From the IMG/VR virus record IMGVR_UViG_3300042889_001503, positions 1 to 64,000 of that record: 64,000 nucleotides of DNA. One strand, 5' to 3'. The translations under genes and the position numbers were made by a program. Below, piece by piece: positions 3,224-64,000 of this stretch. How positions within the stretch are numbered: position 1 is the stretch's first letter; the number at the start of each line of letters is the position of its first letter. The notes under the pieces were generated by a model. It searched no databases and was not told the DNA's origin. It was given only the letters and a program-made list of their open reading frames with translations.

Positions 3224-3871
3224 ATGAAAAAAGTTATATTAGAAGAAATTGAAAATATGAAATACCTTTTGGGGTATAAAAGAGGTGTTGTTATTTCTGA
3301 ACAAGAAGAAAAAAATGATTTGATTGATAAATACTCAACTAAATCAATATCAAATTCTATCGATTCAGGTGATTACTCAAATCTTGACCCAAGAGTTGCT
3401 GATGCAATTAAACAATCTCAGAATATGGTTGGTGGACAATCTATTTTACCTAACTCAACTTCAGGAACTACGTCAGGAACTACGTCAGGAACTACTTCAG
3501 GAACTACGTCAGGAGCAACAACTCCGGCACCATCAACCCCTGCAACACCAATAAAAATCGGTGTAAAATATCCATCAATAATGGAATTACAAAATTCATT
3601 AAATACTAAATTTCAATCAGGATTAACTCCGGATGGTATGTATGGACCTAAAACCTCATCAAGTATTTTAGCAGCATTAACAAAAACATCAACAACAACC
3701 ACCGCAAATACGACACCGGTAAATACTGTTGTTGGTGGTGACGCATCATCTGAAGCGATTAAAAAAACCGCTGAGGCAAATGCTTCAATATCTAAAGGTG
3801 TTGTTGCTAATGCACCAAAACCGGCAGCAAATTCTAATTTTGCTGAAGTAGACGGTGGTGATTTTACATAA
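3224..3871 (+). CDS. putative internal virion protein with leader, SGTT repeats and PG_binding_1-like domain
   Basis: Leader EEIENMKYLLGY..ISEQ; segment ELQNSLN..LTPDGMYGPKT. Confidence 0.7.
   Translation: MKKVILEEIENMKYLLGYKRGVVISEQEEKNDLIDKYSTKSISNSIDSGDYSNLDPRVADAIKQSQNMVGGQSILPNSTSGTTSGTTSGTTSGTTSGATTPAPSTPATPIKIGVKYPSIMELQNSLNTKFQSGLTPDGMYGPKTSSSILAALTKTSTTTTANTTPVNTVVGGDASSEAIKKTAEANASISKGVVANAPKPAANSNFAEVDGGDFT
3461..3520 (+). repeat. 12-bp tandem repeat (TCAGGAACTACG, about 5 copies) encoding SGTT
   Basis: Directly visible in the sequence. Confidence 0.95.
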
Positions 3872-3897
3872 AATATAAACAATAAAAAATAAAAAAA

Positions 3898-4335
3898 ATG
3901 AAAAATTTATTCAACAGTATTTCTCAAGAAGAAAAAAATAGAATACTTGAGATGCACTCAGGTAAAAAAAATGTAATATCTGAACAATCTGAACACGGAA
4001 AAGGGGCGATTATTCCTGAACCTAAAAAAAATAAAGTTGCAACACCACAGATGTTAGATAAAGTTTTAAAAAAACTTAATTATGATATTGAAACAGGGGG
4101 TTCTAAATTAAAATTTATGAAAAATATACCTGAAAAAAAATTAACTTTATTTGTTACTTTTACTCCGGAATATGCGATTGTTAATAAGAAAAAAGATAAA
4201 GAACCAACTCAAACAGGAACTGATGGTAAAATTCACGGAATGGGATTAGCGATTCCAGCTGAAAAGTTTCCTTTATTGTTGAAACCTAATACTCTAAAAG
4301 AATTTGAAAAATTTCTTATGAGTTGTGAAAAATAA
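3898..4335 (+). CDS. putative internal virion protein with shared leader
   Basis: Leader SQEEKNRILEMHSGKKNVISEQ. Confidence 0.7.
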   Translation: MKNLFNSISQEEKNRILEMHSGKKNVISEQSEHGKGAIIPEPKKNKVATPQMLDKVLKKLNYDIETGGSKLKFMKNIPEKKLTLFVTFTPEYAIVNKKKDKEPTQTGTDGKIHGMGLAIPAEKFPLLLKPNTLKEFEKFLMSCEK

Positions 4336-4337
4336 TA

Positions 4338-13828: not shown

Positions 13829-16800
13829 ATGGGATTTGATAGTAGAAAAAAATCGGGTAATATAATCGGGGGGTCAAGACTTAATGTTATTGGTCAGGGG
13901 ATTTATAATGTGAAAATTATCCCACCTGGATTTACTAAGCGTTTACCTGCGTATGCCGATGCTGGTGGAAACCCACCAAGTCAAACACCAAGTAACACTC
14001 CAACTCAAACTCCAACACTATCAATAACCCCATCAAATACGCCAACACCTACATATACTCCAACACCAACTCAAACTGCAACACCATTATATTGTGATTT
14101 TAGTTATTATGTTAACGCAATCACTCCAACTCCAACATCAACATCATTAGCGTGTGATTTCACATATGAAGTCGAATTATTTACAAATACCCCAACACCA
14201 ACCCCAACACCAACTCCAACACAAACAATAACACAAACACCAACACAAACTGAGACGCCAACACAAACACCAACACAAACTGAGACGCCAACACAAACTC
14301 CAACACCAACACAAACTGAGACGCCAACACAAACCCCAACACAAACCCCAACATCCTCTCCATTACCACCAACAGTTGAGTATTTCCAAGATTGTTGTGA
14401 TAGTCTTACCGTATATAAAGTTGGTGGTGTATCAACCCCTATTATTGTTGGTAACACTTATTACATCAACACTGATGGATTTAGTGGTTGTGGGACTGCG
14501 GTAAGTGGTCCACCATATAATAGTCAATCTTTAATTATTAGTGTTACATCATACTCAAATTGTGTTCTGTGTGAGGTAGACAATCCTTGCCCAACACCAA
14601 CACCAACACCAACAATGACAGTAACACCAACAAATACTCAAACCCCAACGGTTACACAAACACCGACGGTTACTCAAACACCAACTAATACACCAACAAA
14701 TACTCAAACCCCAACTAATACACTTACACCTACACCTACTCCAACAGTTTGTATTCCACAAATGATATATAGTGGTGAAAAATTTATTAATATACCACTT
14801 CATACTAGTGCGTCTTTCAAACCGGATGGTACGATATTATATATTGCAATTCATAATGGTTCACCAACTGATAGTGTATGTGCTTATTCATTATCAACAC
14901 CGTGGGATGTTTCAACAATTACATTACCACTAATAGGATGTTCAATTGCTGTTCCGGTAATTTCCGGATTAACCCCTACTAGTGTAATTGGTCATCATTT
15001 TTCACCGGACGGTAGTAAATTATTTGTAGTTGAGACAGCATCAAAAAGTGTCCTTAGATATATATTATCAACATCGTGGGATGTTACAACATCTAGTTAT
15101 TCACCCGGTGACTTATTTACTATAGTTGGTTTAACTCCGTCACATATTGATTTTACCCCTGACGGTTTATTTATGTTTGTTACTGTTACGGGTAGCCTTC
15201 TTAAAAAATATAGTTTAACCACACCTTGGGTTATAAATACGGGGGTTGTGGAAATTCAATCAATTTCCAACTCAATTGTTTCCGATTTTACTTTTCAAAA
15301 TAGTGGAACTTATTTGTTTTCAATAGTATCAGGTCCAAGTATAAGAAGACAAACACTATCTACACCGTATGATTTAACTTCAATTGTTCCTGTTTTAACT
15401 CAGACAGAAAATGTAAGTAGTTTTATTTCAGGAGGTAATCTTTATTCTCTTAATTTTAAAGATGGTTATAAAGGGTTTATTGGTGGTTATTACTCAACCG
15501 GTTTGAACGGAATTACAGCTTTTAATCTTACCTGTGAATACGATATTAGCGGGACTTTAATATTACCAACACCTACTCCAACACCAACTCAGACGGTTAC
15601 ACCAACCAATACAGTTACTCCAACACCAACATTACCACCATCGTTTGTTTCAGTATGGAGAACAACAACACCATCTGAAAGTATTACATTACCATATTCA
15701 CCATCAGGAACATATAGTGGAACAATAGATTGGGGCGACGGTAGTATATCCGCTAACACATATGCAAATAGAACACACACATACTCATTATCAGGTAATT
15801 CTACTGTTACAATTTATGGAACAACTAATGGTTGGGCGTTTGGTAATACTGGTGACATATTAAAAATTAGAGAAGTTTTAAAATGGGGACCATTAAAAAT
15901 TAGTAATGGTGCTCAAGTTTTTAGAGGATGTAGTAATTTAGTATTAACCGGTGTTACGGACACTATTGATTTAACAAGTGTTAATAATTTAATTTATATG
16001 TTTGGAGGTTGTTCATCTCTTACAACCATCAACAACGTTAATAGTTGGAATGTTTCAGGAATTACCGTTATGAGTAATATGTTTCAATCATCAACTTTTG
16101 ACGATGATATAAGTTCTTGGAGTGTTTCAAATGTTACAGATATGAATCGTATGTTCCAATTTGGAGCATTTAACCATAATATAAATTCGTGGAATGTTTC
16201 AGGGGTTACAAGTATGGAAAATATGTTTAGACAATCTTCTTTTAATCAACCATTATCAGGTTGGAATGTTTCAAAGGTTACATCTACTATGGCAGGTATG
16301 TTTGATGGAACCTTATTTAACCAAGATATAAGTATGTGGAATGTTTCAGGGGTTACAAGTATGAGTGGTATGTTTAGATACACCCCATTTAATTATTCTC
16401 TTAATAATTGGAATGTTTCAAAGGTAACAAATATGTCTAATATGTTTTATGGTGCGTCATTTAATTTACCATTATCAGGCTGGAATGTTTCAAAGGTTAC
16501 AAATATGAATTCTATGTTCGCATCAACTTCACAATTTAACCAAAACATTAATTCGTGGAATGTTTCAGGTGTTACAGATATGGGTTCTATGTTTTATCAA
16601 AACGCATATTTTAACCAACCATTATCCGGATGGAGTGTGTCAAACGTTAGAAATATGTCTTTTATGTTTTACAATTCACCATTTAATTATCCTATTGGTA
16701 ATTGGGATGTTTTAAATGTTACAGGAATGACATCTATGTTCCAAAGTTCATCATTTAACCAAGACATCGGAAATTGGAATATATCGGGAGTAACCAATTT

Positions 16801-17017
16801 CACTGATTTTATGTTTGCAAAAACACCGATTACATTCTCAACAATAAATTTAGATTCTATTTATAATGGATGGCAAACCAAAACACCGCAAACCGGATTA
16901 ACAATTAATTTTGGTTCTGCAAAATACACATTAGCGAGTCAACCGGGTAAAGATATACTAACAGGTTCAACTATGAGCGGTGGATATGGTTGGACAATAA
17001 CAGATGGGGGGATATAA
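13829..17017 (+). CDS. large surface/fibre protein: Pro/Thr linkers, Cys-rich module, beta-propeller-like repeats, DUF285/BspA-like repeats
   Basis: (PT)n tracts; F.PDG..L(Y/F)....Y.LSTPWDV repeats; IDWGDG; FNQPLSGWNVS.VT.M..MF repeats. Confidence 0.85.
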   Translation: MGFDSRKKSGNIIGGSRLNVIGQGIYNVKIIPPGFTKRLPAYADAGGNPPSQTPSNTPTQTPTLSITPSNTPTPTYTPTPTQTATPLYCDFSYYVNAITPTPTSTSLACDFTYEVELFTNTPTPTPTPTPTQTITQTPTQTETPTQTPTQTETPTQTPTPTQTETPTQTPTQTPTSSPLPPTVEYFQDCCDSLTVYKVGGVSTPIIVGNTYYINTDGFSGCGTAVSGPPYNSQSLIISVTSYSNCVLCEVDNPCPTPTPTPTMTVTPTNTQTPTVTQTPTVTQTPTNTPTNTQTPTNTLTPTPTPTVCIPQMIYSGEKFINIPLHTSASFKPDGTILYIAIHNGSPTDSVCAYSLSTPWDVSTITLPLIGCSIAVPVISGLTPTSVIGHHFSPDGSKLFVVETASKSVLRYILSTSWDVTTSSYSPGDLFTIVGLTPSHIDFTPDGLFMFVTVTGSLLKKYSLTTPWVINTGVVEIQSISNSIVSDFTFQNSGTYLFSIVSGPSIRRQTLSTPYDLTSIVPVLTQTENVSSFISGGNLYSLNFKDGYKGFIGGYYSTGLNGITAFNLTCEYDISGTLILPTPTPTPTQTVTPTNTVTPTPTLPPSFVSVWRTTTPSESITLPYSPSGTYSGTIDWGDGSISANTYANRTHTYSLSGNSTVTIYGTTNGWAFGNTGDILKIREVLKWGPLKISNGAQVFRGCSNLVLTGVTDTIDLTSVNNLIYMFGGCSSLTTINNVNSWNVSGITVMSNMFQSSTFDDDISSWSVSNVTDMNRMFQFGAFNHNINSWNVSGVTSMENMFRQSSFNQPLSGWNVSKVTSTMAGMFDGTLFNQDISMWNVSGVTSMSGMFRYTPFNYSLNNWNVSKVTNMSNMFYGASFNLPLSGWNVSKVTNMNSMFASTSQFNQNINSWNVSGVTDMGSMFYQNAYFNQPLSGWSVSNVRNMSFMFYNSPFNYPIGNWDVLNVTGMTSMFQSSSFNQDIGNWNISGVTNFTDFMFAKTPITFSTINLDSIYNGWQTKTPQTGLTINFGSAKYTLASQPGKDILTGSTMSGGYGWTITDGGI

Positions 17018-19432: not shown

Positions 19433-19436
19433 TATT

Positions 19437-45352: not shown

Positions 45353-45359
45353 ATTGTTC

Positions 45360-46415: not shown

Positions 46416-46416
46416 A

Positions 46417-46695: not shown

Positions 46696-47291
46696 TATAT
46701 TATTTTTGTTAATTCAAATTCTAATTCTTTAATTGTTGTTATAGAATTGTCTAATTTGATATGTTTATTGTATTCCGTTTGATATTGTATGATAATTTTA
46801 TCATCCGGATGTTCTAATAATAAGGCGGGATTAGCCGTAAGTAAAACATCAATTTCGTCCCACATTGAATTTATTGTCATATTACTATAGAATTTTACTT
46901 TTTCTATCTGACAACCAAATTTTGATAAGAAGAATAACGATGATGGTTTTGACCTACCCATTTCATCAGACACAATTAATATGTCGTGATTATCTCTTAA
47001 ATTTACGTATATCTCATTTAAATCATTGAAGGTTGAATATTCAGTTGATTGAGAGTGTCCAAAAATTTCCATAGGAAACTCCTCATATAAAAATGAATAT
47101 AATTCTTCGTCCGTTTGGAACTTAAAATGATTTCTAAGATTTAAACTATCTACCGGTAGGGATATCTCATATTTAAAAGATTCTTCGTCTTCCAACCCCT
47201 CCGTCTTATCTATCATATATTTTTGATAGGTTTGTTCTATTTTATCTATTGTATTTCTTAATACTCCGTTAATCTCAATTGCTATTCTCAT
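46695..47291 (-). CDS. HAD-like 5'(3')-nucleotidase homolog with degenerate motif I
   Basis: MRIAIEINGVLRN in place of DxDGVL; C-terminal EYNK. Confidence 0.5.
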   Translation of the reverse strand: MRIAIEINGVLRNTIDKIEQTYQKYMIDKTEGLEDEESFKYEISLPVDSLNLRNHFKFQTDEELYSFLYEEFPMEIFGHSQSTEYSTFNDLNEIYVNLRDNHDILIVSDEMGRSKPSSLFFLSKFGCQIEKVKFYSNMTINSMWDEIDVLLTANPALLLEHPDDKIIIQYQTEYNKHIKLDNSITTIKELEFELTKII

Positions 47292-48036: not shown

Positions 48037-48043
48037 TTTTTAA

Positions 48044-49033: not shown

Positions 49034-49916
49034 AATTTTCTATAAACCAATTTATTGTTTCTTTTAATCCCTGTTCAATTGGGGTAAATTCAAAATTAGG
49101 TAAATACGATTTTAATTTTGAATTATCCGATGGTTTTCTAAATTGACCATCAGGTTTTGTTTTGTCAAATATTACTTTCCCTTTAAAGTTAAACTCATTA
49201 ACTAATAAATCAACCAAATCTTTAATACTAATTTCATTTGAGTTACTGAATATAATAGGTTCTGATTCATTATAATTGTCTAAGGCCCATTCAGATAATT
49301 TTGCGATATCTTTAGAATATATAAATTCCCTTAATGGTGTTCCACTACCCCAAACAACAAAATCAGCGTTATCTCTTTGAGCGTTATACATTTTATGTAA
49401 TAACATAGGGATTACGTGACCGGTGTCTAATGAAAAATTATCATTTGGTCCGTAAATGTTTGTTGGGATTACTGACACATATTCTAACCCATATTGTTCC
49501 CTATAAGCTCTTATTTGAATATCAGCCATTCTTTTTGCGTATGCGTATGGGTAATTTGAAAAGTGAGGGGCTCCTAAGTGAATTTTTTTCTCAGTTATTG
49601 GGTATTCAATATTGTCCGGAAATACACAAGTTGATAAAAATGATACTAATTTTTTAACATTATTTTTTCTGGCCGATTCAATAACGTTAGTGTTAATCAT
49701 TATGTTATCGTAAAAAAACTCTCCTTTATAATTCATATTGGCACTAAGACCACCTACTTTACCGGCACAATGAATAACGTGAGTTGGTTTATGGTATTCA
49801 AACATTTTATCGGTTTCTTCAATATTTCTCAAATCATACTCTTTACCAATTTTTACATCAGAAGTAATGGAAGAACCAACTAAACCATTACCACCGGTTA
49901 CTAATAATTTTTTCAT
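49014..49916 (-). CDS. fcl: GDP-4-keto-6-deoxymannose epimerase/reductase (GDP-L-fucose synthase / ColC-like)
   Basis: GGNGLVG, AGKVGG, LSTCVFP, YAYAKR, PTNIYGPNDNF, WGSGTPLREF. Confidence 0.9.
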   Translation of the reverse strand: MKKLLVTGGNGLVGSSITSDVKIGKEYDLRNIEETDKMFEYHKPTHVIHCAGKVGGLSANMNYKGEFFYDNIMINTNVIESARKNNVKKLVSFLSTCVFPDNIEYPITEKKIHLGAPHFSNYPYAYAKRMADIQIRAYREQYGLEYVSVIPTNIYGPNDNFSLDTGHVIPMLLHKMYNAQRDNADFVVWGSGTPLREFIYSKDIAKLSEWALDNYNESEPIIFSNSNEISIKDLVDLLVNEFNFKGKVIFDKTKPDGQFRKPSDNSKLKSYLPNFEFTPIEQGLKETINWFIENYENTRK

Positions 49917-51064
49917 ATATTTTCGTTAACAATTTTAATTACTTTAGTTATTTCTTCTTCAGTCATTTGGTGATTGTTTGGTAAGTATAAACCATATTCG
50001 TGTACTAACTTTGAATTAGGTAATTCTTGTTTCCCATATCTTTCATACCAAAATGGGTGTTCGTTTATTGACCCACAAATTAATGGTCGACATTCGATAT
50101 CATTATTTTGTAATTCAGTTATCAATCTGTCAAGATTTTTAGTTATTATAGGATAAGAAAAATTTGACACATAGGAATTACTTGTTGGTTTAACCTCCCA
50201 AAAATCATTTTTGATACCTTCTTTATATCTTATGTAATTCTTATATCTAGATTCAACAATATGGTCTAATTTATCCATTTGTTGAATTCCGATAAACGCT
50301 TGTAAGTCAGTTGCTCTTAAATTAAACCCCGGGTAATAAAAGGTGTATAATGATTTAAAATCATTAACCTTATATTTTTCGCGTAATTCTTTTTGTTTCG
50401 ATAAAGGTAAATCTCTGTCCCACCCGTGCGACCTAATGGATAATAAAATATGATACAATTCTTCATTATCTGTTGATACCATACCACCTTCAATTGTTGA
50501 CATATGATGTCCAAAATAAAATGAAAAGGTTGATAAATCTCCAAAAGTTCCTAAATGTTTATCACCGTATTTTGAACCAATAGATTCACAAGTATCCTCA
50601 ATTAATAAAATATCATTTTCTTCACATAGCTCAATGATTTCTTTCATATGATTAGGAAAACCTAATACGTGAACTAATATAATTGCGGAAGGGTTTTCTT
50701 CTTTAATTAACGTTTTTAAATGGTTAATATCTAAACCTAAATTATCCTTATCACAATCACACATAATAGGCGTTAATCCTAATTGTATTGCCGGTGTCAC
50801 AGTAGTTACCCAAGAAACTGCTGGAACAATAATTTTATTATTTTTTAACTTACCGGATAGTATTAACGAATAAATCGCCGCTAAATTGGCTGAAGACCCG
50901 GAATTCACAAATACCGAATACTTACACCCTAACCATTTAGACCATAAGTCCTCAAAAGTTGTTGTTAATTCTCCTTTAGTTAATCTTGGATTGGTTTTTA
51001 ACCATTCTATTAATTTGGTGATGTCATCAAAATCAATAGTGTCCTTTACTAGTTTAATACTCAT
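49913..51064 (-). CDS. colD: ColD-like GDP-4-keto-6-deoxymannose 3-dehydratase (DegT/DnrJ family)
   Basis: NSGSSAN, VPAVSW, EDTCES, SFYFGHHMSTIEGG (His in place of the Schiff-base Lys), RSHGW.R, PGFNLR. Confidence 0.75.
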   Translation of the reverse strand: MSIKLVKDTIDFDDITKLIEWLKTNPRLTKGELTTTFEDLWSKWLGCKYSVFVNSGSSANLAAIYSLILSGKLKNNKIIVPAVSWVTTVTPAIQLGLTPIMCDCDKDNLGLDINHLKTLIKEENPSAIILVHVLGFPNHMKEIIELCEENDILLIEDTCESIGSKYGDKHLGTFGDLSTFSFYFGHHMSTIEGGMVSTDNEELYHILLSIRSHGWDRDLPLSKQKELREKYKVNDFKSLYTFYYPGFNLRATDLQAFIGIQQMDKLDHIVESRYKNYIRYKEGIKNDFWEVKPTSNSYVSNFSYPIITKNLDRLITELQNNDIECRPLICGSINEHPFWYERYGKQELPNSKLVHEYGLYLPNNHQMTEEEITKVIKIVNENI

Positions 51065-51833
51065 ATATGTCTTTAATTGTTAAGTTGATTAGGTCGTTAT
51101 AATCTATTGTTTTTTCGCAACTATAATAACCACCTCTTTTTATTTTTAAGTTATTGGATTCGTCGTATTCTATGTAATCTATAATGTTTTTATTTAATTT
51201 TGTAAAGATGTCCTCAATAAACTTTTGAACATTGATTAATTCACCTAAACCAACAATACAATCTTTATCGGCTTTTAATGAAACATCAACAATGTTTTTA
51301 GGGTGGGTTAAATCTCTATTAAAATTAATATCACCAATAGATATTTTTTTATCGTTCAGTATTGAATCAAATATTTTACCAAAGAGAAACCCTTCTTTTC
51401 TATAAACAGAATTAAAGTTAAATGGGTAGATTATTATTACGTTAGGGTAAACATCTCTGTTATGATTAATATAGTTACAGAGAATTTCTTTTGATTTAAT
51501 ATATGGTGAGTAATTATAGTTATACTCATCACTTAGGGAGACACACCCGTCGTATTTATTCCACAATTCTGATGTTGAATAAATGATGACCTTATTTGAG
51601 ATGTCTTTAAACTTATTAATAACTTCTAACGTATAATCAAAATTAGTTTTTATAAAAAACTCATCAGATTCATTTAAAAAAGTTCGTTGTTCCGCAAATA
51701 ATAAAAAAACCTTGTCATACTTTTTAGAACAAAGTGTTGCAAAATCTATGTTTCGGGACGATATTTTTTCATAATCATTGGGGAAATAATGACTTAACTG
51801 AGATGTATTCCCAATTACTAAATTACTCAACAC
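51054..51833 (-). CDS. NAD-dependent epimerase/dehydratase-like protein
   Basis: LVIGNTSQL, YSTSE, YIKSK (YxxxK), RDLTH. Confidence 0.65.
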   Translation of the reverse strand: MLSNLVIGNTSQLSHYFPNDYEKISSRNIDFATLCSKKYDKVFLLFAEQRTFLNESDEFFIKTNFDYTLEVINKFKDISNKVIIYSTSELWNKYDGCVSLSDEYNYNYSPYIKSKEILCNYINHNRDVYPNVIIIYPFNFNSVYRKEGFLFGKIFDSILNDKKISIGDINFNRDLTHPKNIVDVSLKADKDCIVGLGELINVQKFIEDIFTKLNKNIIDYIEYDESNNLKIKRGGYYSCEKTIDYNDLINLTIKDIYEY

Positions 51834-52167
51834 CTTTATATAATTTTACCGAATCCTCAATTAATGATTTACCTTGACTTATTGAATTATCAACCATCCG
51901 ATTTATTGCCTCAACATATTTAGGTCGTTTACTTTTAAAACAGATGTCAATTTTTTTCTTTAACACAGCAATTTCAGAGTCGGTTTTAGCATCACTAATG
52001 GCGTCTTCTAAATACCACATTCTACAATGTAATATGGATAATTTTTCAATCACCTCACCTAAATTATCGGTTTCAATGATATCATCAGGTAATTCAACAT
52101 TTTTATTTTTAGTTAAAATTTCTAATGTTTTATTTTTAATTATTTCTTCAATTTTTTCACCTATCAT
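51823..52167 (-). CDS. hypothetical protein, DUF4254-like
   Basis: LGEVIEKLSIL..RMWYLED. Confidence 0.45.
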   Translation of the reverse strand: MIGEKIEEIIKNKTLEILTKNKNVELPDDIIETDNLGEVIEKLSILHCRMWYLEDAISDAKTDSEIAVLKKKIDICFKSKRPKYVEAINRMVDNSISQGKSLIEDSVKLYKGVE

Positions 52168-52169
52168 AA

Positions 52170-53039
52170 TTATTTAATTTTTAAATTTATTTCATTTTGT
52201 ATTGTTGTTATCATATTAGGATAATTTAAATTATTTGACCATAAATTTTTATTTTTACCATCATAATAAAATATACCTTCAGATTCATTAAATGTGAATG
52301 AAATGAATGTTTTTTTATCGTCATTAAAATTTTCTTTAGTATGTGTAAAACAAAATGGTCCGGAAGCCCTTCCTACAATAATATCACAATGATTTGAAAT
52401 TAGACTAATTTGTAATAAATCAGGTAATGATTCTGTTATTTGTGGATATGTTGTAATAACATTAGAATTATTTTCATATAATTGATTAGTACTTAAAAAT
52501 AAACAATTAGGGTTATTTTCAGACAAATTTTCAACAATAGGTGTGAAACTAAAATTATGTGATTGACTTGAATTTACATTACCGTCACAAACTAAAATAA
52601 TTAAATCATATTTTAGTTTTAATTCTTTTATTTTGTTTACAATATTATCATGCGATTTTAAATTAGTATTAATCACAGAGGGTAAATACTTATTAAAATC
52701 ATTATCTAATTCAATATTATAGAAATCACAAATATCGGTAACTAATTTAAAATGATTAATAAATGAACAACCAGGAATAGGTTGGTGTGATACATAAATC
52801 ATTTGTTTTTGTCCTATCCAAGTATTCACAATATTATTTTCTAAATTTGTGTTGTGAATATCATAATTTCCGGGGATACCCACAATTTCATTAACTTCAG
52901 GTAAATCTTCAAATAATGGTGATTGTAGATTATGATAGTATGTAATGTTATAATGGTTTTTTAAAATATTAATTAATATTCTTGAGTAAAATATATCACC
53001 ATTGTGGAAATGATTATATAATGTTATATTGTTTTTCAT
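52170..53039 (-). CDS. putative glycosyltransferase (GT-B-like)
   Basis: HNGD N-terminal motif; CDIIVGRASGP; start taken as MKNNITLY. Confidence 0.55.
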   Translation of the reverse strand: MKNNITLYNHFHNGDIFYSRILINILKNHYNITYYHNLQSPLFEDLPEVNEIVGIPGNYDIHNTNLENNIVNTWIGQKQMIYVSHQPIPGCSFINHFKLVTDICDFYNIELDNDFNKYLPSVINTNLKSHDNIVNKIKELKLKYDLIILVCDGNVNSSQSHNFSFTPIVENLSENNPNCLFLSTNQLYENNSNVITTYPQITESLPDLLQISLISNHCDIIVGRASGPFCFTHTKENFNDDKKTFISFTFNESEGIFYYDGKNKNLWSNNLNYPNMITTIQNEINLKIK

Positions 53040-53043
53040 ATTA

Positions 53044-53817
53044 TTAACTATAATGTATGTGTTTATCCATATATTTAAAATTTTCATTTAAATTATTTAA
53101 TAATGAAAAAGTTGATACGTTACTTCTACTTACTAATTTAAAATCAGTTAATGATAATAAAATAGAATCAACAATAACTTCTTCGGCTAATTTAGATTTA
53201 TTTGGTAGATTTGAAAAATGTAAACCAACATTAGAATCACCCCTTCTTGATTCAGTATAAATTAAAGTATCACCTAATTCTTTTTTAAAAAAATTCAAAG
53301 AATTATTATCATCAGTCATTAAATAAATTTTATCATAACTGTTATGTTTAAATTCTTCATTAATATTTGACAAAATAATTTCATCAGATAATAATGCTCC
53401 GTGAGTACTATGGTCTGTACCTCTTTTTTGAACACCTAAAGTTTTTAACCCTTTAAAATAATTTTTATCAATATTGTTAAAAAAAATATTATCCATTAAT
53501 TTTAAATCAATCAATGTTTGAGAGGGGGTTTTTAAATTTTTTAAAATAGTTAATTCATCAAGTCCATTTCCAATAGCTTCAGGGAAATAATACCCATAAG
53601 GGGTTAAATTAATAAATGTTGACGTAATTGGTTCAATATCATAAACTTGTTTAAAAAATTTATCATATAGATTTTCGTTAGATAAATCACTATACATATA
53701 ATTAAACCATTCAACATTAAATTTTTGATTATTATCGTTAAAATACATTATACCCGCTAATAATGTTAAAAAATCCGAAAAAAAACCTTCGTTTCGGTTT
53801 ATTATTAATTTATTCAT
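53044..53817 (-). CDS. NodZ/FUT-like GDP-sugar (fucosyl/colitosyl) transferase
   Basis: EGFFS, LGVQKRGTD, IYLMTDD, D..LLS.TD....SNVS. Confidence 0.7.
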   Translation of the reverse strand: MNKLIINRNEGFFSDFLTLLAGIMYFNDNNQKFNVEWFNYMYSDLSNENLYDKFFKQVYDIEPITSTFINLTPYGYYFPEAIGNGLDELTILKNLKTPSQTLIDLKLMDNIFFNNIDKNYFKGLKTLGVQKRGTDHSTHGALLSDEIILSNINEEFKHNSYDKIYLMTDDNNSLNFFKKELGDTLIYTESRRGDSNVGLHFSNLPNKSKLAEEVIVDSILLSLTDFKLVSRSNVSTFSLLNNLNENFKYMDKHIHYS

Positions 53818-53823
53818 ATTTTA

Positions 53824-54501
53824 TTATAAATTTTTATTTAATTCAAAATTTATTGATTTTCTTTTTAGATATAAATTTTTATCAATATAATCATTTTTAG
53901 AATTTTCTAAATGTATATTGTCTCGACCACCGAATCCAACATCAGGATGTTCATGTTTAATTATTAGTTCATTAAAATAAGTTTGTTTATTTAATAAGTT
54001 TGCAACATCCATAAATTCGTTATCCGCCCATAAAGATTTATATTCTGGATGATAAATGTAATTAAACCTCTCATAATATTTTTTACCTAAAATACATAAA
54101 GTATTCAATCTATTACCTTGATAACCATCATTAAACCATAAAACACCATCAGTATCCGGATATTTTTCTTTCATTTTTTTTCTAATGATTGTATCGTAAC
54201 CTTTAACTTTTGGTATCATATCATCAGATGCTAATAAGACAATATCCCAATCATTTTCGGTTTCCATATCTCTATTTATGGCTTCGATTTTTGATTTACT
54301 TTCACCATAAATGTATGATAAGTTTTTGTATTCTTTAAACATCTCAATAACACCCGGTTGATTCATAACTTTATCATCAGTGTCTAATGTTACTAAAAAT
54401 TTAATATTATCTAAATCATCACACATTGTGTAATACATTTTTAAAACATTAAAGAATTTAAATGTTCGTCCTCTAGTAGGAAACTTAATTAAAATTTTCA
54501 T
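53824..54501 (-). CDS. glycosyltransferase, GT-A fold
   Basis: KFPTRGR, LASDDM, WADNE, IKHEH. Confidence 0.7.
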   Translation of the reverse strand: MKILIKFPTRGRTFKFFNVLKMYYTMCDDLDNIKFLVTLDTDDKVMNQPGVIEMFKEYKNLSYIYGESKSKIEAINRDMETENDWDIVLLASDDMIPKVKGYDTIIRKKMKEKYPDTDGVLWFNDGYQGNRLNTLCILGKKYYERFNYIYHPEYKSLWADNEFMDVANLLNKQTYFNELIIKHEHPDVGFGGRDNIHLENSKNDYIDKNLYLKRKSINFELNKNL

Positions 54502-55882
54502 TCTTAAAATTTTTGTTCATTATTTTATTATACAACTCTTGTTGGTTGTTATTCGCCTCTGTTGATACGGTTCCGTCACTTTCGTGGTGAAAATATACAA
54601 AAAGAGGTTTTGGTATTCTTTTCCCCGAATATCCCTTCAATCCCATTCTAATCCATAAATCATAATCTTCCCATCCTTTCAATGTAACATCATACCCGTC
54701 ACAAACATCAAACGCTTCTTTATGAAACATTGAACAATTAACTATAAACGGACCTTCTCTTAATCTTTCTATAGACCATTCAGGTCTTTTTTCGATTCCT
54801 TGTATTTGACCTATATGATGTGTATCACAATAAACCGGACTAATGGTTTTATTGTTTTTTAAAATGTTAACACAGAATTGAATATAATCCGGATGAATAG
54901 TGTCATCACCATCTAATGGTAGTATAAAAATACCATTTGAATTTTTAACCCCATTATTTCTTGCTGAAGATGGTCCTTGATTTTCTTGATATATGATTTT
55001 AATATTTGGATGGTCTTTAATACTCTCTAATTTTAATTTAACGTAAGTATCGGTTGACCCGTCATCAACAATTACTATCTCTACATTTTTATAGGTAGAA
55101 TCAAATACTGATTGTAACGATTTTTCGAATTGTAACCCATAATTGTAAATCGGAATTATAACAGAAACTAACGGTAACTTTGGATTAATTTTATTTATCG
55201 GGTATTTTGATTCTAATTTAATAGGTAATTTTTCTTTGTATTTTTCTAAAAATAATAATCTATTCTGTTCCCACTGATTATTGGTCATACCAATAGAAAG
55301 ATGTGTTAACGGGACATTTGAAATTGTTCCAACTTTAACTCCGGATAAATGATTACTCATACAAAATGATGTATCATAAAAATGGAATCCGGTAAATGAT
55401 TCATCAAAATTAGTTTTTAAATTACTTTTTTTAACGGCAAAGAAAACACCATCAACAATAACGGAATCTATTATTTTTGACCCAAATGGTTTATTATATT
55501 CAGATAACCATTTTTTACCTTCGTGCTGATGATAAACTTGACCAATCATCTCACCCTGTATGTCCCACCATCTTCCGGAATTAGGGTAATATGATGTTCC
55601 AGCAACACCTAAAATACCGTATTCAGGTTTTTTGGTAAAATGTTCTAAAACTCGTTTACCCCAATATTCTTTTTCAAAAATGATATCATTATGACAAAAC
55701 ACAATAATATCATTAACTGATTCGTTTAATCCTTTGTTATAAACTTCAGTTAAACTAAATTGGTTATGGTTAACATACTCCAATATTTGAACATTTTTTA
55801 AACCAACAGTTTGTAACAAATGTTGTCTAAATTTGTTATTATATTGTTCGTCTTTATGTGTTGAATAAATTACTGTTATCAT
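54485..55882 (-). CDS. two-domain glycosyltransferase (GT2-like plus GT2)
   Basis: YNKG..FCHNDI..GVAG..VDGVF..FHFYD; second domain VSVIIPIYN, VDDGSTD, ARNNG, LDGDD, EDYDLW. Confidence 0.88.
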   Translation of the reverse strand: MITVIYSTHKDEQYNNKFRQHLLQTVGLKNVQILEYVNHNQFSLTEVYNKGLNESVNDIIVFCHNDIIFEKEYWGKRVLEHFTKKPEYGILGVAGTSYYPNSGRWWDIQGEMIGQVYHQHEGKKWLSEYNKPFGSKIIDSVIVDGVFFAVKKSNLKTNFDESFTGFHFYDTSFCMSNHLSGVKVGTISNVPLTHLSIGMTNNQWEQNRLLFLEKYKEKLPIKLESKYPINKINPKLPLVSVIIPIYNYGLQFEKSLQSVFDSTYKNVEIVIVDDGSTDTYVKLKLESIKDHPNIKIIYQENQGPSSARNNGVKNSNGIFILPLDGDDTIHPDYIQFCVNILKNNKTISPVYCDTHHIGQIQGIEKRPEWSIERLREGPFIVNCSMFHKEAFDVCDGYDVTLKGWEDYDLWIRMGLKGYSGKRIPKPLFVYFHHESDGTVSTEANNNQQELYNKIMNKNFKNENFN

Positions 55883-61160: not shown

Positions 61161-61215
61161 ATCAACTTTTTATATATAAATACTTCGTTTCTGACTATTT
61201 ATCATAAAAAAGATT

Positions 61216-64000
61216 GTGAGTCAAAATATAAATCAATTTCCGAAACCAAATTGGGGTGTAAAATTAGCGTTAGACGTTAGTGATATATCATTATCTACTG
61301 ATGAAAGAAACTATAAAGAAGAGGTTGTTTTTTCCCCTTATTTAATTGCCGAGACATATGGTAATAAATTACCTATTAATTTTGATATTAATAACCCAAT
61401 TTCTGCACAACAAATTGATTTATACTATAAAAACTATAACTTCAATAATCTTTTTGTTTCTAAAAACTATTACAACCCTGATAATGTTGATTTATTTTGT
61501 TTAACCGCTAATACATCTTGTGATATTGGTTTAACCGGGATTGACAATGGGTTGGTGGAATCAATGACGGGACAGTCAATCACATTTACAAACGGTATTA
61601 ATGATTACACCAAATTCAATAGATTGTCTTTTGATAGACGATTAAAGTTATTTCAAGTTACAGGATACACTAGTTCTAATGTTAGATTCTCAGGTTTTAA
61701 TGACACAATATTATATGAGGTTGTTAGTAAAAATGATAGTGTAGGTAGATACCACGAACTTTATGGTGGATTCTATCAAGGGTTCTATAGATTATTTGGT
61801 TATGACTATAACATTTTTCCTGAAAGAATGAATAAAGGATGGTCGGTTGAAATGTTGTTAAAACCAAGATTAATTAACGAATATACTCCATCGTTAGGTG
61901 AAACAACCTTAAATGAGATTTACCCAAACAACAAAGATATATTCTTTTACTTTGGGGCTCGTGCTGAAAATAAATTCTATCATTACGCCGACGGACACCC
62001 AAGATGTTTTACCGGTTACACTAGAGTTACCTCAGAGGTCACAGGTTTAACAACTTGTGCTTGTTGTAATAATTCTGTTGTTAATAGTAGATGTATCTAT
62101 GTTTATCCACCTAGACCAACTAAAGCGGATTGTGATGGTTGTATTAGTTGTGGTTGGGAATATAAAATACACGATTGTCCATTACCTACACCAACACCAA
62201 CTCCAACACCAACTCCGATACCGGTCCCTTCAAATTGCGAACCAATCACGGCTTGTACTGCGGGATGTACTTGTGTACAATGTATATCTTGTAACGATTG
62301 TCAAACTTGTGATAATTGTAATGTAACTCCGGGTTCAGTTGAGAATACTTGTGAGAGTGACCCATTGTTTGATTCAATGTCAAACGCATTATCATTTAAA
62401 TTATGTGGTGACCCACATAACCCTCAAATTGGTGTTAGATTACTAAGATTTACCGGAGGATGTGAGACTAGTGGAAGTTGTTCAACAACAGGAATTACTT
62501 ACACAACAGGATACACTATAGACAATTATTGTACACCACCAATTTATCCTTATTGTTTAGAAGTTAATCCAAGTTATTTAGATATGGAACATTGGTTTCA
62601 TATTACAGCCGTTTGGGAGAGATATACTTGGTTAGACACTTGTGACTTATGGTATAGAGGGGGTATTGGAGATATCACGGAGAAAAAATATTTAGATGGA
62701 TTAGCAAATAACTCAAAAGAGTTAATCACTGTTCCATATACACAAACTTGTGGGACTGACCCACAACAAATTGATTTGGTTAATCTAAATGAGAAATGGT
62801 TGATTGATAAGGATTTTAGAAAAGGAAGATTAAAAATATACATTAATGGAAGAATATTCCACACATTTCAAGATATTGAGGAAATTATCCCAAGAGCATT
62901 ATCCACAGATAAGGAAAAACAAGTCGGTGTTCCTTATAATATTTCGTGGGGTGGTGGAACCCAAGGTTTAAGAGAAAATTTAACTTTCTCGGCAATTACC
63001 GGAACAACTTATATCCAAGACCCGGAATGTTTACCAACTAACGATTTGTTAGGAACAACGTTTAGTGGATTAACGACTGATATATTATTAGAACAAAATT
63101 TTGGTGGAACATTTGATGGGGGTATATCTCAATTCAGAATGTATGTGGAGCCATTATCATCAGACGAAGTTAAACATAATTTTAAATTATTAAAAGATAC
63201 GTTTGATATGTTTAATCCTGATTGCCCTGATTGTGGTGAAAATTTCTGTCCGGTTGATGATTTTACATATGTGATTAATGGTCCTACTCCAACACCTACC
63301 AATACTCAAACACCAACACCCACATCAGAACCATTAAATTTAACCCTTTTCGTGGAATATACACCGGGTTCTATAATTGCGTATTATAGATTAGTATTGA
63401 ACCGTTCATATAGTGAAGAAATAAATGTTACTTTTGAAAATGTTCTAAATGTCTATAGTGGGACTCCGATTACAATATTTACTGGTGTTACGGTTAGTTT
63501 AGGGGATTTATCAGGACAAACTATTGTTACAATAAATGAAGATTATAACAACTATAATGGGGAACCATTTTTTAGTCAATTATCGGGAACTCCGAATGGA
63601 AGTACGTGGGAAATAATTTTAATCCAACCAACACCAACCCCAACACCAACTAATACCGTAACTCCAACTAATACCATAACACCAACTAATACCGTAACTC
63701 CAACTAATACCATAACACCAACACAAACCTTAACTCCGACTAATACCATAACACCAACACAAACCTTAACTCCGACTAATACTCCAACTGAAACACCAAC
63801 TCAAACCTTAACTGAAACTCCGACAAACACTCCAACTCCGACTATTACAGAAACTCCAACTAATACTCCAACAAATACCTTAACACCAACTCCGACCCCT
63901 ACACCAATTATACCATTAGTTTTAATACAAGGTTTATTTTCTTATGAAGGTTGCATACCTTGTGAGACTTCTTGTTTATTAGGTTTAATTACTTTATATA
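61216..64000 (+). CDS. large virion-type protein with split LamG/ConA-like domain, Cys-rich and Pro/Thr tracts (runs off window; not in ORF track)
   Basis: Manual translation from GTG 61216 stays open to 64000: GWSVEMLLKP, HWFHITAVW, LKIYINGR, FDGGISQFRMY..PLS..EV; CxxC run; (TPTNT)n; TATTTAT at 61196-61202. Confidence 0.85.
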   Translation, partial: MSQNINQFPKPNWGVKLALDVSDISLSTDERNYKEEVVFSPYLIAETYGNKLPINFDINNPISAQQIDLYYKNYNFNNLFVSKNYYNPDNVDLFCLTANTSCDIGLTGIDNGLVESMTGQSITFTNGINDYTKFNRLSFDRRLKLFQVTGYTSSNVRFSGFNDTILYEVVSKNDSVGRYHELYGGFYQGFYRLFGYDYNIFPERMNKGWSVEMLLKPRLINEYTPSLGETTLNEIYPNNKDIFFYFGARAENKFYHYADGHPRCFTGYTRVTSEVTGLTTCACCNNSVVNSRCIYVYPPRPTKADCDGCISCGWEYKIHDCPLPTPTPTPTPTPIPVPSNCEPITACTAGCTCVQCISCNDCQTCDNCNVTPGSVENTCESDPLFDSMSNALSFKLCGDPHNPQIGVRLLRFTGGCETSGSCSTTGITYTTGYTIDNYCTPPIYPYCLEVNPSYLDMEHWFHITAVWERYTWLDTCDLWYRGGIGDITEKKYLDGLANNSKELITVPYTQTCGTDPQQIDLVNLNEKWLIDKDFRKGRLKIYINGRIFHTFQDIEEIIPRALSTDKEKQVGVPYNISWGGGTQGLRENLTFSAITGTTYIQDPECLPTNDLLGTTFSGLTTDILLEQNFGGTFDGGISQFRMYVEPLSSDEVKHNFKLLKDTFDMFNPDCPDCGENFCPVDDFTYVINGPTPTPTNTQTPTPTSEPLNLTLFVEYTPGSIIAYYRLVLNRSYSEEINVTFENVLNVYSGTPITIFTGVTVSLGDLSGQTIVTINEDYNNYNGEPFFSQLSGTPNGSTWEIILIQPTPTPTPTNTVTPTNTITPTNTVTPTNTITPTQTLTPTNTITPTQTLTPTNTPTETPTQTLTETPTNTPTPTITETPTNTPTNTLTPTPTPTPIIPLVLIQGLFSYEGCIPCETSCLLGLITLY

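What the first reader, a model, noticed from the sequence alone, without database searches (positions are those of the whole stretch)
3461..64000. [ST]-G-x-T tetrapeptide appears enriched in virion surface proteins: candidate glycosylation sequon
Counted by eye. The 61216 ORF has nine (VTGYT, FTGYT, VTGLT, TTGIT, TTGYT, ITGTT, FSGLT, FTGVT, LSGQT). MCP has four, all in its variable central insertion (LSGFT, VSGST, YTGTT, STGFT). 38223-39683 has four. 3224 has a tandem (SGTT)n array. Many DUF285 repeats read VSGVT/ISGIT where others read VSNVT/VSKVT. I found none in ClpC or terminase. A motif recurring across unrelated folds suggests selection for a modification site, and the phage GT cluster is the obvious candidate writer.
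Basis: partly seen in the sequence, partly recalled or inferred. Interest (0 to 1): 0.68.

Follow-up and report, generated by a model that had tools for sequence, protein, structure and literature searches.

The report
Recurrent Ser/Thr-Gly-x-Thr motif in phage virion proteins
A four-residue motif, [Ser/Thr]-[Gly/Ala]-x-Thr, really is over-represented in head, baseplate and fibre-like proteins of this large aquatic phage and its relatives but not in other phages tested, which fits a modification site such as a sugar attachment point, though no modification has been shown.

Summary
The genome has 119 [ST]GxT against 46.6 expected from per-protein composition. About half come from three repeat families: the DUF285 core WNVSGVT, a 36-aa fibre repeat and an (SGTT)n linker. 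After repeat masking 49 remain against 23.7 expected.

The stronger evidence comes from 80 metagenomic relatives. I scanned all a-b-x-c patterns, counting distinct alignment sites against column shuffles that keep phylogeny and local composition. TGxT and SGxT rank 1 and 2 in three baseplate/tail-side families, and SAxT ranks 3. TGxS, SGxS, NGxT and DGxT are not enriched. Sites turn over between homologues. In a complete 321-kb relative without DUF285, TGxT ranks 1 of 6,833 patterns genome-wide. Control alignments from T4-like and immuto-like phages, and the single genomes Mel-JY01, XacN1 and CM1, show little or none.

The motif is therefore specific to this lineage. Glycosylation remains untested. 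No glycosyltransferase co-varies with the motif. The transferases could instead modify DNA or the host surface. The Pro-Thr linkers next to a GT60-like gene are the more canonical glycan target. My leading reading is an enzyme recognition or acceptor motif (about 0.35). A lineage-specific structural idiom is nearly as likely (about 0.3).

The parts
3461..3520 (+). (SGTT)4-SGAT tandem array, aa 80-99 of the 215-aa ORF 3224-3871. It is a low-complexity linker. The ORF gives weak endolysin PHROG hits.
13829..17017 (+). DUF285/BspA-like repeat protein 1 (1062 aa). It has an N-terminal (TPTQ)n Pro-Thr linker and 10 [ST]GxT, mostly repeat cores WNVSG[VI]T plus the C-terminal module TGLTINFG...TGSTMSGGYGW.
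17021..19432 (+). DUF285 paralogue 2 (803 aa), with 10 [ST]GxT.
19416..21650 (+). DUF285 paralogue 3 (744 aa), with 8 [ST]GxT. Its N-terminal module is Y-TGGT-ISLG..LPYDY.
21654..21863 (+). 69-aa ORF carrying the same N-terminal module (TGYT, TGGT).
26625..26636 (+). Portal (gp20-like, 25071-26957) residues 519-522, SGAT. The site is kept as [ST]-G-x-T in 24 of 27 homologues, with S/T exchange and free x, inside a poorly conserved tail (local identity 0.47).
31137..33008 (+). gp23-like major capsid protein. About 234 aa (144-377) stand where T4 gp23 has about 95 aa. It has four [ST]GxT sites. Only TGTT350 (nt 32184-32195) is conserved (70/79). Across the family [ST]AxT is the more enriched form.
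37571..38176 (-). 201-aa Cys-containing tail-side protein with 3 sites. Its homologues carry 3.4 on average against 0.7 expected.
38223..39698 (-). 491-aa tail-side protein with C-terminal tandem beta-sandwich domains (atlas lead: CBM96-like) and 4 sites. Its homologues carry 2.1 against 0.47 expected, at 14 distinct columns.
39706..41274 (-). 522-aa protein. Atlas lead only: gp5/gpV-like baseplate hub or spike. It has 1 site here. Its homologues carry 2.6 against 0.33 expected (z 10 against column shuffle).
44540..55882 (-). Sugar/GT block, co-directional with and upstream of the tail-side genes. It holds GT2 (44540), a weak GT1-like hit (45360), PhoH, GMD (48044), an epimerase/reductase (49014), a DegT aminotransferase (49913), an epimerase-like gene (51054), a weak NodZ-like hit (53044) and a double GT2 (54485). 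A dUTPase/dCTP-deaminase-like gene and an exonuclease follow it.
61216..64000 (+). N-terminal 928 aa of a 1972-aa fibre-like DUF285 protein that runs on to 67134. It has nine [ST]GxT in the Cys-rich N-terminal part and a (TPTN)n linker.

Best explanation
[ST]-[GA]-x-T is a genuine short linear motif specific to this phage lineage. In this window the raw count has two layers.

Layer 1, about half of the count, is inherited repeat sequence: the DUF285 beta-solenoid core W-N-V-S-G-V-T, a 36-aa fibre repeat LPLSGGTVTGATIFT just outside the window, and an (SGTT)n linker.

Layer 2 is a recurrent four-residue element in variable, mostly loop-before-strand positions of the capsid-protein insertion and of three baseplate/tail-side proteins. 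There, sites are gained and lost between relatives while the load stays several-fold above expectation.

The rules are compact. Position 1 takes S or T equally. Position 2 takes a small residue (G, then A, but not N or D). Position 3 is free. Position 4 takes T but not S. There is almost no flanking consensus, apart from few charged residues at -1.

I read this as the footprint of a trans-acting enzyme that recognises the motif in late proteins. The leading candidate is O-glycosylation of Thr/Ser by one of the lineage's core glycosyltransferases, acting in the cytoplasm before or during assembly.

Shown: the enrichment, its specificity, the turnover of sites and the restriction to this lineage. 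Inferred: that any modification exists, that it is a glycan, and which enzyme writes it.
For: - Composition- and repeat-corrected enrichment in this genome.
- Unbiased scan of 3,468 patterns over three tail-side families from relatives: TGxT rank 1 (21 distinct sites against 4.5, z 8.1) and SGxT rank 2 (18 against 4.0, z 6.8). The next pattern reaches z 4.2.
- The result holds when columns are shuffled only within 15- or 30-column windows: [ST]GxT 40 against about 10, z about 9, 0 of 300 shuffles. SAxT ranks 3. TGxS, SGxS, NGxT, DGxT and GGxT stay near 1.
- A complete relative, G004 (321 kb, no DUF285), replicates it genome-wide: TGxT rank 1 of 6,833 (62 against 25.8, P 1e-9) and SGxT rank 4.
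- Controls show little or none. T4-like baseplate and fibre families give z -0.7 and 0.6. Immuto-like families give z 1.9 and 0.5. XacN1 gives a ratio of 1.16 and CM1 0.97. Mel-JY01 gives 1.03 and T4 1.37. Non-DUF285 parts of cellular BspA homologues give 1.57 for SGxT and 1.13 for TGxT.
- The DUF285 cores here use G at 44% (24/55), against 6.4% (86/1337) in 120 mostly cellular homologues. This fits an acquired repeat drifting toward the motif.
- Sites lie in the more variable regions and are poorly conserved in position, while the per-protein load is maintained.
- Flanks carry little information. In the AF2 models the sites are mostly coil just before a strand.
- The lineage has core GTs. A PF11397 GT60-like gene is in 3 of 3 complete genomes and GT2s are in all of them. 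The sugar genes are co-directional with the motif-rich tail-side genes.
Against: - There is no direct evidence of any modification.
- No GT co-varies with the motif. GMD is absent from complete relative G005, whose proteins are still motif-rich. XacN1 and CM1 carry the GT60-like gene without enrichment. Immuto and Mel-JY01 have GT2s but no lineage-level enrichment.
- The GTs sit among dUTPase/dCTP-deaminase-like, exonuclease and RNaseH-like genes, and a ThyA-family gene exists. DNA glycosylation or host-surface modification are therefore equally plausible uses.
- A GT60-type enzyme would canonically target Thr-rich mucin-like stretches, and such (TPTQ)n linkers are abundant here. The most Thr-rich protein is depleted for [ST]GxT (1 against 4.6).
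- Non-structural proteins show no avoidance of the motif (16 against 15.5).
- Several homologues of the enriched families carry zero sites.
- The conserved portal site lies in a C-terminal tail that is probably inside the head.
- The DUF285 S and T are conserved across cellular homologues for structural reasons, and G-rich DUF285 lineages also occur on a 1.56-Mb cellular contig.
- The AF2 models are of low to moderate confidence (pLDDT 64 and 56), and no coordinates were available to measure exposure.
Confidence: 0.35

Rival explanations
1. Lineage-specific structural idiom. The motif is a loop-to-beta-strand cap: a small residue in a tight turn, then a beta-branched Thr opening the strand. 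It is used repeatedly by domain types that this lineage shuffles among its fibre, baseplate and capsid-insertion proteins. No enzyme reads it. The GTs serve DNA or host-surface modification.
For: - In the AF2 models most sites sit in coil immediately before a strand.
- Preferring T over S at position 4 matches beta propensity.
- S/T and G/A are the commonest conservative exchanges, and several sites are semi-conserved columns: S[AG][LI]T in the 38223 family, TG[TAS]T in the MCP and [ST]A[VI]T in the MCP.
- BLAST-detectable module sharing exists among these proteins: the N-terminal TGGT module, and the 67149 and 21654 ORFs are fully masked.
- The DUF285 and fibre-repeat instances are clearly structural. 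T4 gp36 carries the same core (LRSGDTMTG) once, and T4 is not known to glycosylate its proteins.
- The immuto phage fibres have their own GDGSGLTGIT repeats.
Against: - T4-like baseplate and fibre families, and cellular beta-rich BspA homologues, show no such enrichment. It is therefore not a general property of beta-rich fibrous proteins.
- N and D, the classic turn residues, are not enriched at position 2, while A is.
- The flanks show no hydrophobic periodicity or extended consensus, which a shared domain would produce.
- The secondary-structure contexts are mixed: loop, strand end and helix N-cap.
- Sites turn over rather than staying at fixed structural positions.
Confidence: 0.3
2. Virion glycosylation exists but targets the Pro-Thr mucin-like linkers, not [ST]GxT. 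A GT60-like polypeptide GlcNAc-transferase initiates the glycans and accessory GT2s and the GMD pathway extend them. The tetrapeptide enrichment is unrelated.
For: - A PF11397 gene (E 2.5e-70) lies directly after the fibre cluster and is core to the lineage.
- CAZy GT60 enzymes initiate mucin-type O-GlcNAc on Ser/Thr-rich domains in protists (PMC8724618). Linking PF11397 to GT60 rests on my own knowledge.
- PTxT, TPxP and TPxQ are the most over-represented patterns in this genome. Five or more fibre or DUF285 proteins carry long (TPTQ)n stretches, and one 1040-aa protein is 26% Thr.
Against: - The same PT linkers occur in cellular BspA homologues, where they are ordinary spacers.
- In XacN1 the GT60-like homologue sits beside carbamoyltransferase and NUDIX genes, a context that suggests nucleotide or DNA modification.
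- No prolyl hydroxylase was found, though the record is only 53% complete.
- This reading does not explain the tetrapeptide signal.
Confidence: 0.2
3. Statistical artefact. The enrichment comes from S/T/G composition, internal repeats or post-hoc pattern picking.
For: - About 46% of the 119 instances are repeat copies.
- The pattern was chosen by eye.
- In this genome alone SGxT ranks 6 of 5,401 with P 2.4e-5, which does not survive Bonferroni correction.
- The MCP enrichment falls to z 2.5 once local composition is kept.
Against: - The enrichment survives per-protein composition correction, repeat masking, pair-term correction and local-window column shuffles.
- Close variants of the pattern are flat.
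Confidence: 0.04

Closest known systems
Mycobacteriophage virion glycosylation (Freeman et al. 2023, Cell Host Microbe; cited through PMC12619734, the paper itself not held)
   Same: Phage-encoded glycosyltransferases modify capsid and tail-tube subunits in the cytoplasm. It is the one established precedent for glycosylated tailed-phage virions.
   Different: In that case the glycans sit on C-terminal extensions and no internal sequon is described. Here nothing has been shown chemically, and the candidate sites are internal loops of the MCP insertion and of baseplate or fibre proteins.
Bacteroidota general O-glycosylation motif D-[ST]-[AILVMT] (own knowledge: Fletcher et al. 2009; Coyne et al. 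2013)
   Same: It is a three- to four-residue S/T-centred motif in the probable host phylum, followed by a small or aliphatic residue.
   Different: It needs Asp at -1, whereas here charged residues are depleted at -1 (0.04-0.07 against 0.24). It acts in the periplasm on exported proteins, not on cytoplasmically assembled virions.
Cytoplasmic N-glycosyltransferase HMW1C/NGT acting on N-x-S/T in beta-helical adhesins (PMC5303269 names NGT; the details are own knowledge)
   Same: It is a soluble cytoplasmic GT that reads a short sequon scattered over a beta-solenoid adhesin. The DUF285 cores S-N-V-T contain N-x-T.
   Different: It is N-linked and belongs to the GT41 family, which was not seen here. 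The lineage shift in DUF285 runs away from N toward G.
Bacillus anthracis BclA collagen-like (GxT)n region, O-glycosylated on Thr (own knowledge: Daubenspeck et al. 2004)
   Same: Its T-G-x-T strings (GPTGPT, GDTGTT) are real O-glycan acceptors on a surface filament.
   Different: It has strict collagen triplet periodicity. Here the motif occurs singly with irregular spacing.
CAZy GT60 polypeptide alpha-GlcNAc-transferases with mucin-like Thr-rich acceptors (PMC8724618)
   Same: A PF11397 protein is core to the lineage and sits next to fibre genes that are rich in Pro-Thr repeats.
   Different: The canonical acceptors are Thr runs, not [ST]GxT. Other phages with the homologue (XacN1, CM1) lack the motif enrichment.
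DUF285 / BspA-type leucine-rich-repeat surface proteins of Flavobacteriia
   Same: Five paralogues match PF03382 at E 1e-97 to 1e-241. The nearest homologues are T9SS-sorted surface proteins of Flavobacteriia and archaeal BspA proteins.
   Different: The variable core residue is G in 44% of the repeats here, against 6.4% in the homologues (N 43%, S 32%).

Membership tests
Protein glycosylation sequon | A short acceptor-containing motif is maintained above expectation in the target proteins, with defined residue rules. | tested here: met
   [ST]-[GA]-x-T takes the top ranks, close variants are flat, and the result replicates in an independent genome.
Protein glycosylation sequon | A glycan is covalently attached at the motif. 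| not testable with these tools
   This needs mass spectrometry of virions or of co-expressed proteins. The genome is a metagenomic record with no isolate.
Protein glycosylation sequon | A writer enzyme's presence goes with the motif. | tested here: inconclusive
   The GT60-like gene is in 3 of 3 complete relatives, but also in XacN1 and CM1, which lack enrichment. GMD is absent from motif-rich G005. GT2s are present everywhere, including in the controls.
Protein glycosylation sequon | The acceptor sites are solvent-exposed on the assembled particle. | tested here: inconclusive
   Most sites fall in coil before a strand in AF2 models of pLDDT 64 and 56. The MCP sites lie in the 144-377 insertion relative to T4 gp23. 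No coordinates were available, so no accessibility could be computed. The portal site is probably internal.
Bacteroidota O-glycosylation motif D-[ST]-[AILVMT] | Asp immediately precedes the acceptor. | tested here: not met
   Charged residues are depleted at -1.
DUF285 / BspA-like repeat proteins | Multiple PF03382 repeats above the gathering score. | tested here: met
   five proteins, E 5.9e-97 to 6.2e-241.
Phage tail-fibre L-S-G-G/D-T-x-T-G motif | The same core motif occurs in characterised tail-fibre proteins. | tested here: inconclusive
   T4 gp36 holds LRSGDTMTG. The 1340-aa ORF with seven LPLSGGTVTGAT copies has no Pfam hit and only a weak PHROG hit.
GT60 polypeptide GlcNAc-transferase with mucin-like acceptors | A PF11397 catalytic domain is present. 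| tested here: met
   (E 2.5e-70, 238 bits against a cut-off of 21) and phrog_24687 at E 1.6e-168.
GT60 polypeptide GlcNAc-transferase with mucin-like acceptors | Thr/Pro-rich acceptor domains occur in co-encoded proteins. | tested here: met
   (TPTQ)n and (TPTN)n linkers in at least seven proteins.
T4-type gp23 major capsid protein | A match to the Gp23 family and to solved gp23 chains. | tested here: met
   PF07068, E 1.3e-74; 8gmo, 6uzc, 5vf3; E about 1e-24 over aa 378-597.

The most novel reading that the evidence does not exclude
[ST]-[GA]-x-T is the acceptor sequon of a cytoplasmic, phage-encoded protein O-glycosylation system that decorates the capsid insertion, baseplate and fibres of a jumbo phage lineage infecting Bacteroidota. 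Sites turn over like the glycan shields of animal viruses. Acquired host adhesin repeats (DUF285) have been re-coded toward the sequon. It would be the first defined glycosylation sequon of a tailed phage.
Probability: 0.2. Interest if true: 0.85.

Novelty: new variant of a known kind. Interest (0 to 1): 0.62.

Why it matters
Protein glycosylation of tailed-phage virions is established in the work I know of only for mycobacteriophages, and no acceptor rule is known for any of them. A four-residue rule readable from sequence would allow three things. Glycosylated phages could be predicted from metagenomes. A function could be assigned to the many orphan phage glycosyltransferases. The idea that aquatic phages shield or tune their surfaces with glycans, against host receptors, grazers or defence sensors, could be tested.

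Even if the motif proves structural, one result stands. An unbiased scan with a null that keeps phylogeny puts one tetrapeptide pattern at the top of a whole phage proteome, and control lineages lack it. That is a reusable way to find short linear motifs in viral dark matter.

Tried and rejected
- Composition alone is rejected.
- Repeats alone are rejected. They explain about half of the raw count but not the rest.
- Lower-order pair terms ([ST]G and GxT) leave a 1.66-fold excess.
- Local S/T/G-rich composition is rejected for the tail-side families by 15- and 30-column local shuffles. It largely explains the MCP [ST]GxT signal, which falls to z 2.5.
- A DNA-level motif or codon effect is rejected.
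- A generic property of beta-rich fibre proteins is rejected by the T4-like lineage, by the cellular BspA homologues and by Mel-JY01, XacN1 and CM1.
- The GT60-like gene as a co-occurring writer gets no support.
- The GMD pathway as a requirement is rejected by G005.
- DGR-type diversification is unlikely, because the motif codons are not of the NNY type.
- Identifying the three tail-side proteins failed. There were no PDB sequence matches. Foldseek gave only generic Ig-like hits or nothing. PHROGs gave nothing. Only atlas leads remain: gp5/gpV-like and CBM96-like.
- An all-against-all hhalign run against T4 families timed out.
- The Freeman 2023 paper is not held.
- No prolyl hydroxylase was found.

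Full report
**What the window is.** The window is G000:C1:70628-134627 of a single 159,912-bp IMG/VR virus record at 32% G+C. CheckV rates the record 53% complete. It encodes a gp23-type major capsid protein (31137-33008), a gp20-type portal (25071-26957), a T4-type large terminase (12039-13808), a gp21-type protease and a ClpC-like ATPase.

The closest isolates by MCP are Flavobacterium phage immuto and Microcystis phage Mel-JY01, at 40-45% identity. IMG/VR holds at least 599 relatives of the MCP. Three complete or near-complete relatives measure 273-321 kb, one of them with terminal repeats. This is therefore a jumbo-phage lineage. The DUF285 homologues point to Flavobacteriia as the likely host group. 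The lineage may correspond to the 'moraphages' of PMC12619734, but I did not verify that.

**Checking the observation.**
- nine sites in the visible part of the 61216 ORF
- four in the MCP
- four in the 38223 ORF
- an (SGTT)4-SGAT array at nt 3461-3520
- none in ClpC or the terminase
- a G/N/K/S alternation at one position of the DUF285 core, with counts 24, 19, 9 and 3 out of 55

Genome-wide there are 119 [ST]GxT against 46.6 expected from each protein's own composition. Nearly all sit in about a dozen proteins. The sequence contexts show that about 46% of the instances are copies of three repeat families:
- the DUF285 core WNVSG[VI]TnM, together with a conserved C-terminal module
- a 36-aa fibre repeat, YQNLPATPFLPLSGGTVTGATIFTDGLT, in a 1340-aa ORF just beyond the window
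- the SGTT linker

After masking BLAST-detectable paralogy and the short internal repeats, 49 instances remain against 23.7 expected. That is z 5.4, reached by 0 of 2000 shuffles. Correcting for the pair terms [ST]G and GxT still leaves a 1.66-fold excess. The excess is confined to the reading frame, and the codons in the motif are mixed, so there is no DNA-level cause.

Within this genome alone SGxT ranks 6 of 5,401 a-b-x-c patterns. That is suggestive but does not survive multiple testing.

I took 80 loci around MCP homologues. The four MCP sites are not a conserved set. Only TGTT350 is kept (70/79), and the other three are kept in 5, 5 and 1 of 79.

Homologues of three minus-strand genes downstream of the head module (37571, 38223 and 39706) carry 3.4, 2.1 and 2.6 sites on average. 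Composition predicts 0.7, 0.47 and 0.33. The sites fall at many different alignment columns.

The portal keeps one [ST]GxT in 24 of 27 homologues. There S and T exchange, G is fixed, x is free and T is fixed, all inside a poorly conserved tail.

To remove both phylogenetic pseudo-replication and the post-hoc choice of pattern, I did the following:
- I counted distinct alignment columns for every a-b-x-c pattern.
- I compared each count with column-shuffled alignments, which keep each column's residues and the tree.

Over the three families TGxT ranks 1 (21 sites against 4.5, z 8.1) and SGxT ranks 2 (18 against 4.0, z 6.8) out of 3,468 patterns. The next pattern reaches z 4.2.

Shuffling only within 15- or 30-column windows also keeps local composition, and the result stands. 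[ST]GxT gives 40 sites against about 10, z about 9, reached by 0 of 300 shuffles. SAxT comes third. TGxS, SGxS, NGxT, DGxT and GGxT stay near expectation.

In the MCP the G form is only marginal under the local null (z 2.5). The A form, [ST]AxT, ranks 1 and 4 in the 30-column shuffle and 2 and 4 in the 15-column shuffle, with 33 sites against about 12.

The rule that emerges is [ST]-[GA]-x-T.

**Replication and controls.** The complete relative G004 (321 kb) has no DUF285 proteins at all. After repeat masking, TGxT is still rank 1 of 6,833 patterns genome-wide (62 against 25.8, P 1e-9). SGxT is rank 4 (54 against 24.9) and SAxT is rank 17.

| Control | Result for [ST]GxT |
|---|---|
| 17 T4-like baseplate and short-fibre families, 49 loci | SGxT z -0.7, TGxT z 0.6 |
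| 13 immuto-like families, 80 loci | z 1.9 and 0.5; only its MCP mildly enriched |
| T4, single genome | ratio 1.37 |
| Immuto, single genome | ratio 1.73 |
| Mel-JY01, single genome | ratio 1.03 |
| XacN1, single genome | ratio 1.16 |
| CM1, single genome | ratio 0.97 |
| Non-DUF285 parts of 120 mostly cellular BspA homologues | SGxT 1.57, TGxT 1.13; SGxS is higher at 2.2 |

The motif is therefore not a general property of beta-rich fibrous proteins. It belongs to this lineage.

Within the lineage only 4 of 17 alignable families carry it: the MCP and the three tail-side proteins. The terminase, the protease, a scaffold-like acidic protein (1 against 13.8) and other families have none or are depleted.

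**DUF285.** The five paralogues are BspA-type repeat proteins. Their nearest homologues are T9SS-sorted surface proteins of Flavobacteriia. In 1,337 repeat cores from the 120 best homologues the variable residue is N in 43%, S in 32%, K in 9% and G in 6.4%. Here it is G in 44%. The S and the T of the core are conserved across homologues, so only x-to-G is needed to create the motif.

This shift fits an acquired repeat being re-coded toward a lineage-specific motif. But repeats evolve in concert, and G-rich DUF285 lineages exist elsewhere, including on a 1.56-Mb cellular contig. It is supportive evidence, not decisive.

**Anatomy of the sites.** The flanks carry little information. Position -1 shows a hydrophobic or aromatic preference, charged residues there fall to 4-7% against 24%, and there is no periodicity downstream.

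AF2 models of the 38223 family (pLDDT 64) and of a 39706-family member (pLDDT 56, with a central domain near 90) place most sites in coil immediately before a strand. One site is at a strand end and one at a helix N-cap.

The MCP sites lie in residues 144-377, which stand where T4 gp23 has about 95 residues. By published T4 structures that corresponds to the outward-facing insertion region (own knowledge).

The identity of the three tail-side proteins remains open. I found no PDB or PHROG matches and only generic Ig-like fold hits. The atlas leads point to a gp5/gpV-type baseplate hub (39706) and a CBM96-like protein (38223).

**The candidate writers.** The minus-strand block 36767-61160 is co-directional. 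In transcription order it contains:
- an exonuclease
- a dUTPase/dCTP-deaminase-like gene
- a double GT2
- a weak NodZ-like hit
- epimerase/reductase genes
- a DegT aminotransferase
- GMD
- PhoH
- a weak GT1-like hit
- a GT2
- an RNaseH-like gene
- then the motif-rich tail-side genes

Beyond the window, directly after the fibre and DUF285 cluster, lie a PF11397 'GlcNAc' glycosyltransferase (E 2.5e-70), another GT2 and an HtrL/YibB-like protein. I take PF11397 to be the Pfam counterpart of CAZy GT60, on my own knowledge. GT60 enzymes are polypeptide alpha-GlcNAc-transferases that start mucin-type O-glycans on Thr/Ser-rich domains in protists (PMC8724618).

That gene is present in all three complete relatives. 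In G004 it again directly follows a run of motif-rich proteins at 55.6-62.8 kb, with the GT at 63.1-64.0 kb.

Co-occurrence does not single out a writer:
- XacN1 and CM1 have a 46-48% identical homologue but no motif enrichment. In XacN1 it sits beside carbamoyltransferase and NUDIX genes.
- GMD is missing from complete relative G005, whose proteins are still motif-rich.
- GT2s occur in the control phages as well.
- The nucleotide-metabolism neighbours and a ThyA-family gene keep DNA hypermodification and host-surface remodelling open as uses of these enzymes.

**A competing glycan target.** The most over-represented patterns in this genome are PTxT, TPxQ and TPxP. The DUF285 and fibre proteins carry long (TPTQ)n or (TPTN)n linkers, and one 1040-aa protein is 26% Thr. 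Such mucin-like stretches are what a GT60-type enzyme would canonically modify. They also occur as plain spacers in the cellular homologues.

**Conclusion.** I am confident of four things: a compact four-residue rule, a lack of flanking constraint, site turnover with a maintained load, and restriction to one phage lineage. Together these fit a short linear motif read by a lineage-specific enzyme better than they fit a fold-inherent turn. I make that the leading explanation at about 0.35, with O-glycosylation as the leading chemistry. A structural idiom of lineage-specific modules is nearly as likely, at about 0.3.

The specific claim that the window's GT cluster writes glycans on [ST]GxT has no direct support, and some evidence counts against particular writers. 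Only mass spectrometry of virions or co-expressed proteins can settle it.

No reads tools, alternative genetic codes or restricted sequences were involved in this work.

Noticed in passing
window 13829-17017 (aa ~56-175), 17021-19432 (aa ~62-115), 21884-25006, 61216-64000 (aa ~800-900): Long Pro-Thr repeat linkers, (TPTQ)n and (TPTN)n. The 1040-aa ORF 21884-25006 is 26% Thr and matches only phrog_15511. PTxT, TPxP and TPxQ are the most over-represented patterns in the genome. The same linkers occur in cellular BspA homologues.
   Followed up: partly
outside the window: G000:C1:146097-147344 (L002:54-1301): A PF11397 'GlcNAc' (GT60-like) glycosyltransferase lies directly after the fibre cluster. 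It is present in all three complete relatives. Among isolates it occurs only in Xanthomonas and Stenotrophomonas jumbo phages, where it sits next to a carbamoyltransferase.
   Followed up: partly
whole record G000; relatives G004, G005, G011: The record is about 53% complete. Relatives are 273-321 kb, one with direct terminal repeats. This is a jumbo-phage lineage with a T4-type head module, possibly the 'moraphages' of PMC12619734 (not verified).
   Followed up: partly
window 19416-19520, 21654-21863; L002:5858-6931: A shared N-terminal module, Y-TGGT-I-x-LG...LPYDY, heads three otherwise different proteins. It may be a common attachment domain for interchangeable distal parts.
   Followed up: no
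L002:5858-6931 (window coordinates 81274-82347, outside the window): A protein with a LCIB_C_CA (limiting-CO2-inducible beta-carbonic-anhydrase-like) domain (E 4.6e-27) behind the fibre-type N-terminal module. This is an unusual domain for a phage.
   Followed up: no
window 29593-31104: The 503-aa protein upstream of the MCP has acid-rich low complexity (EDxD and DDxD patterns in relatives). It is strongly depleted for [ST]GxT across 78 homologues (1 against 13.8 expected). It is probably a scaffold or prohead-core protein.
   Followed up: no
window 55879-57185 and G000:C1:5446-6717: A dUTPase/dCTP-deaminase-like gene and a 3'-5' exonuclease abut the double GT2. A 424-aa ThyA-family protein lies elsewhere in the record. 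Together these hint at glycosylated or otherwise hypermodified DNA.
   Followed up: partly
window 37571-38176, 61216-62600, 31137-33008 (aa 270-350): Cysteines are unusually frequent next to the motif: ldC-SGNT, C-x-[ST]GxT in the large homologues L104 and L107, TGLTTCACC, and tCpsCgdtldgyTGTT. This suggests small disulfide- or metal-stabilised modules.
   Followed up: no
window 4350-6395 (-): A full-length ClpB/ClpC-type double-AAA+ chaperone is encoded by the phage.
   Followed up: no
L104:15514-21178, L107:19306-21700: Some relatives expand the 201-aa 37571-type protein into 560-940-aa proteins with six motif sites each. The family is therefore modular and expands by domain addition.
   Followed up: no
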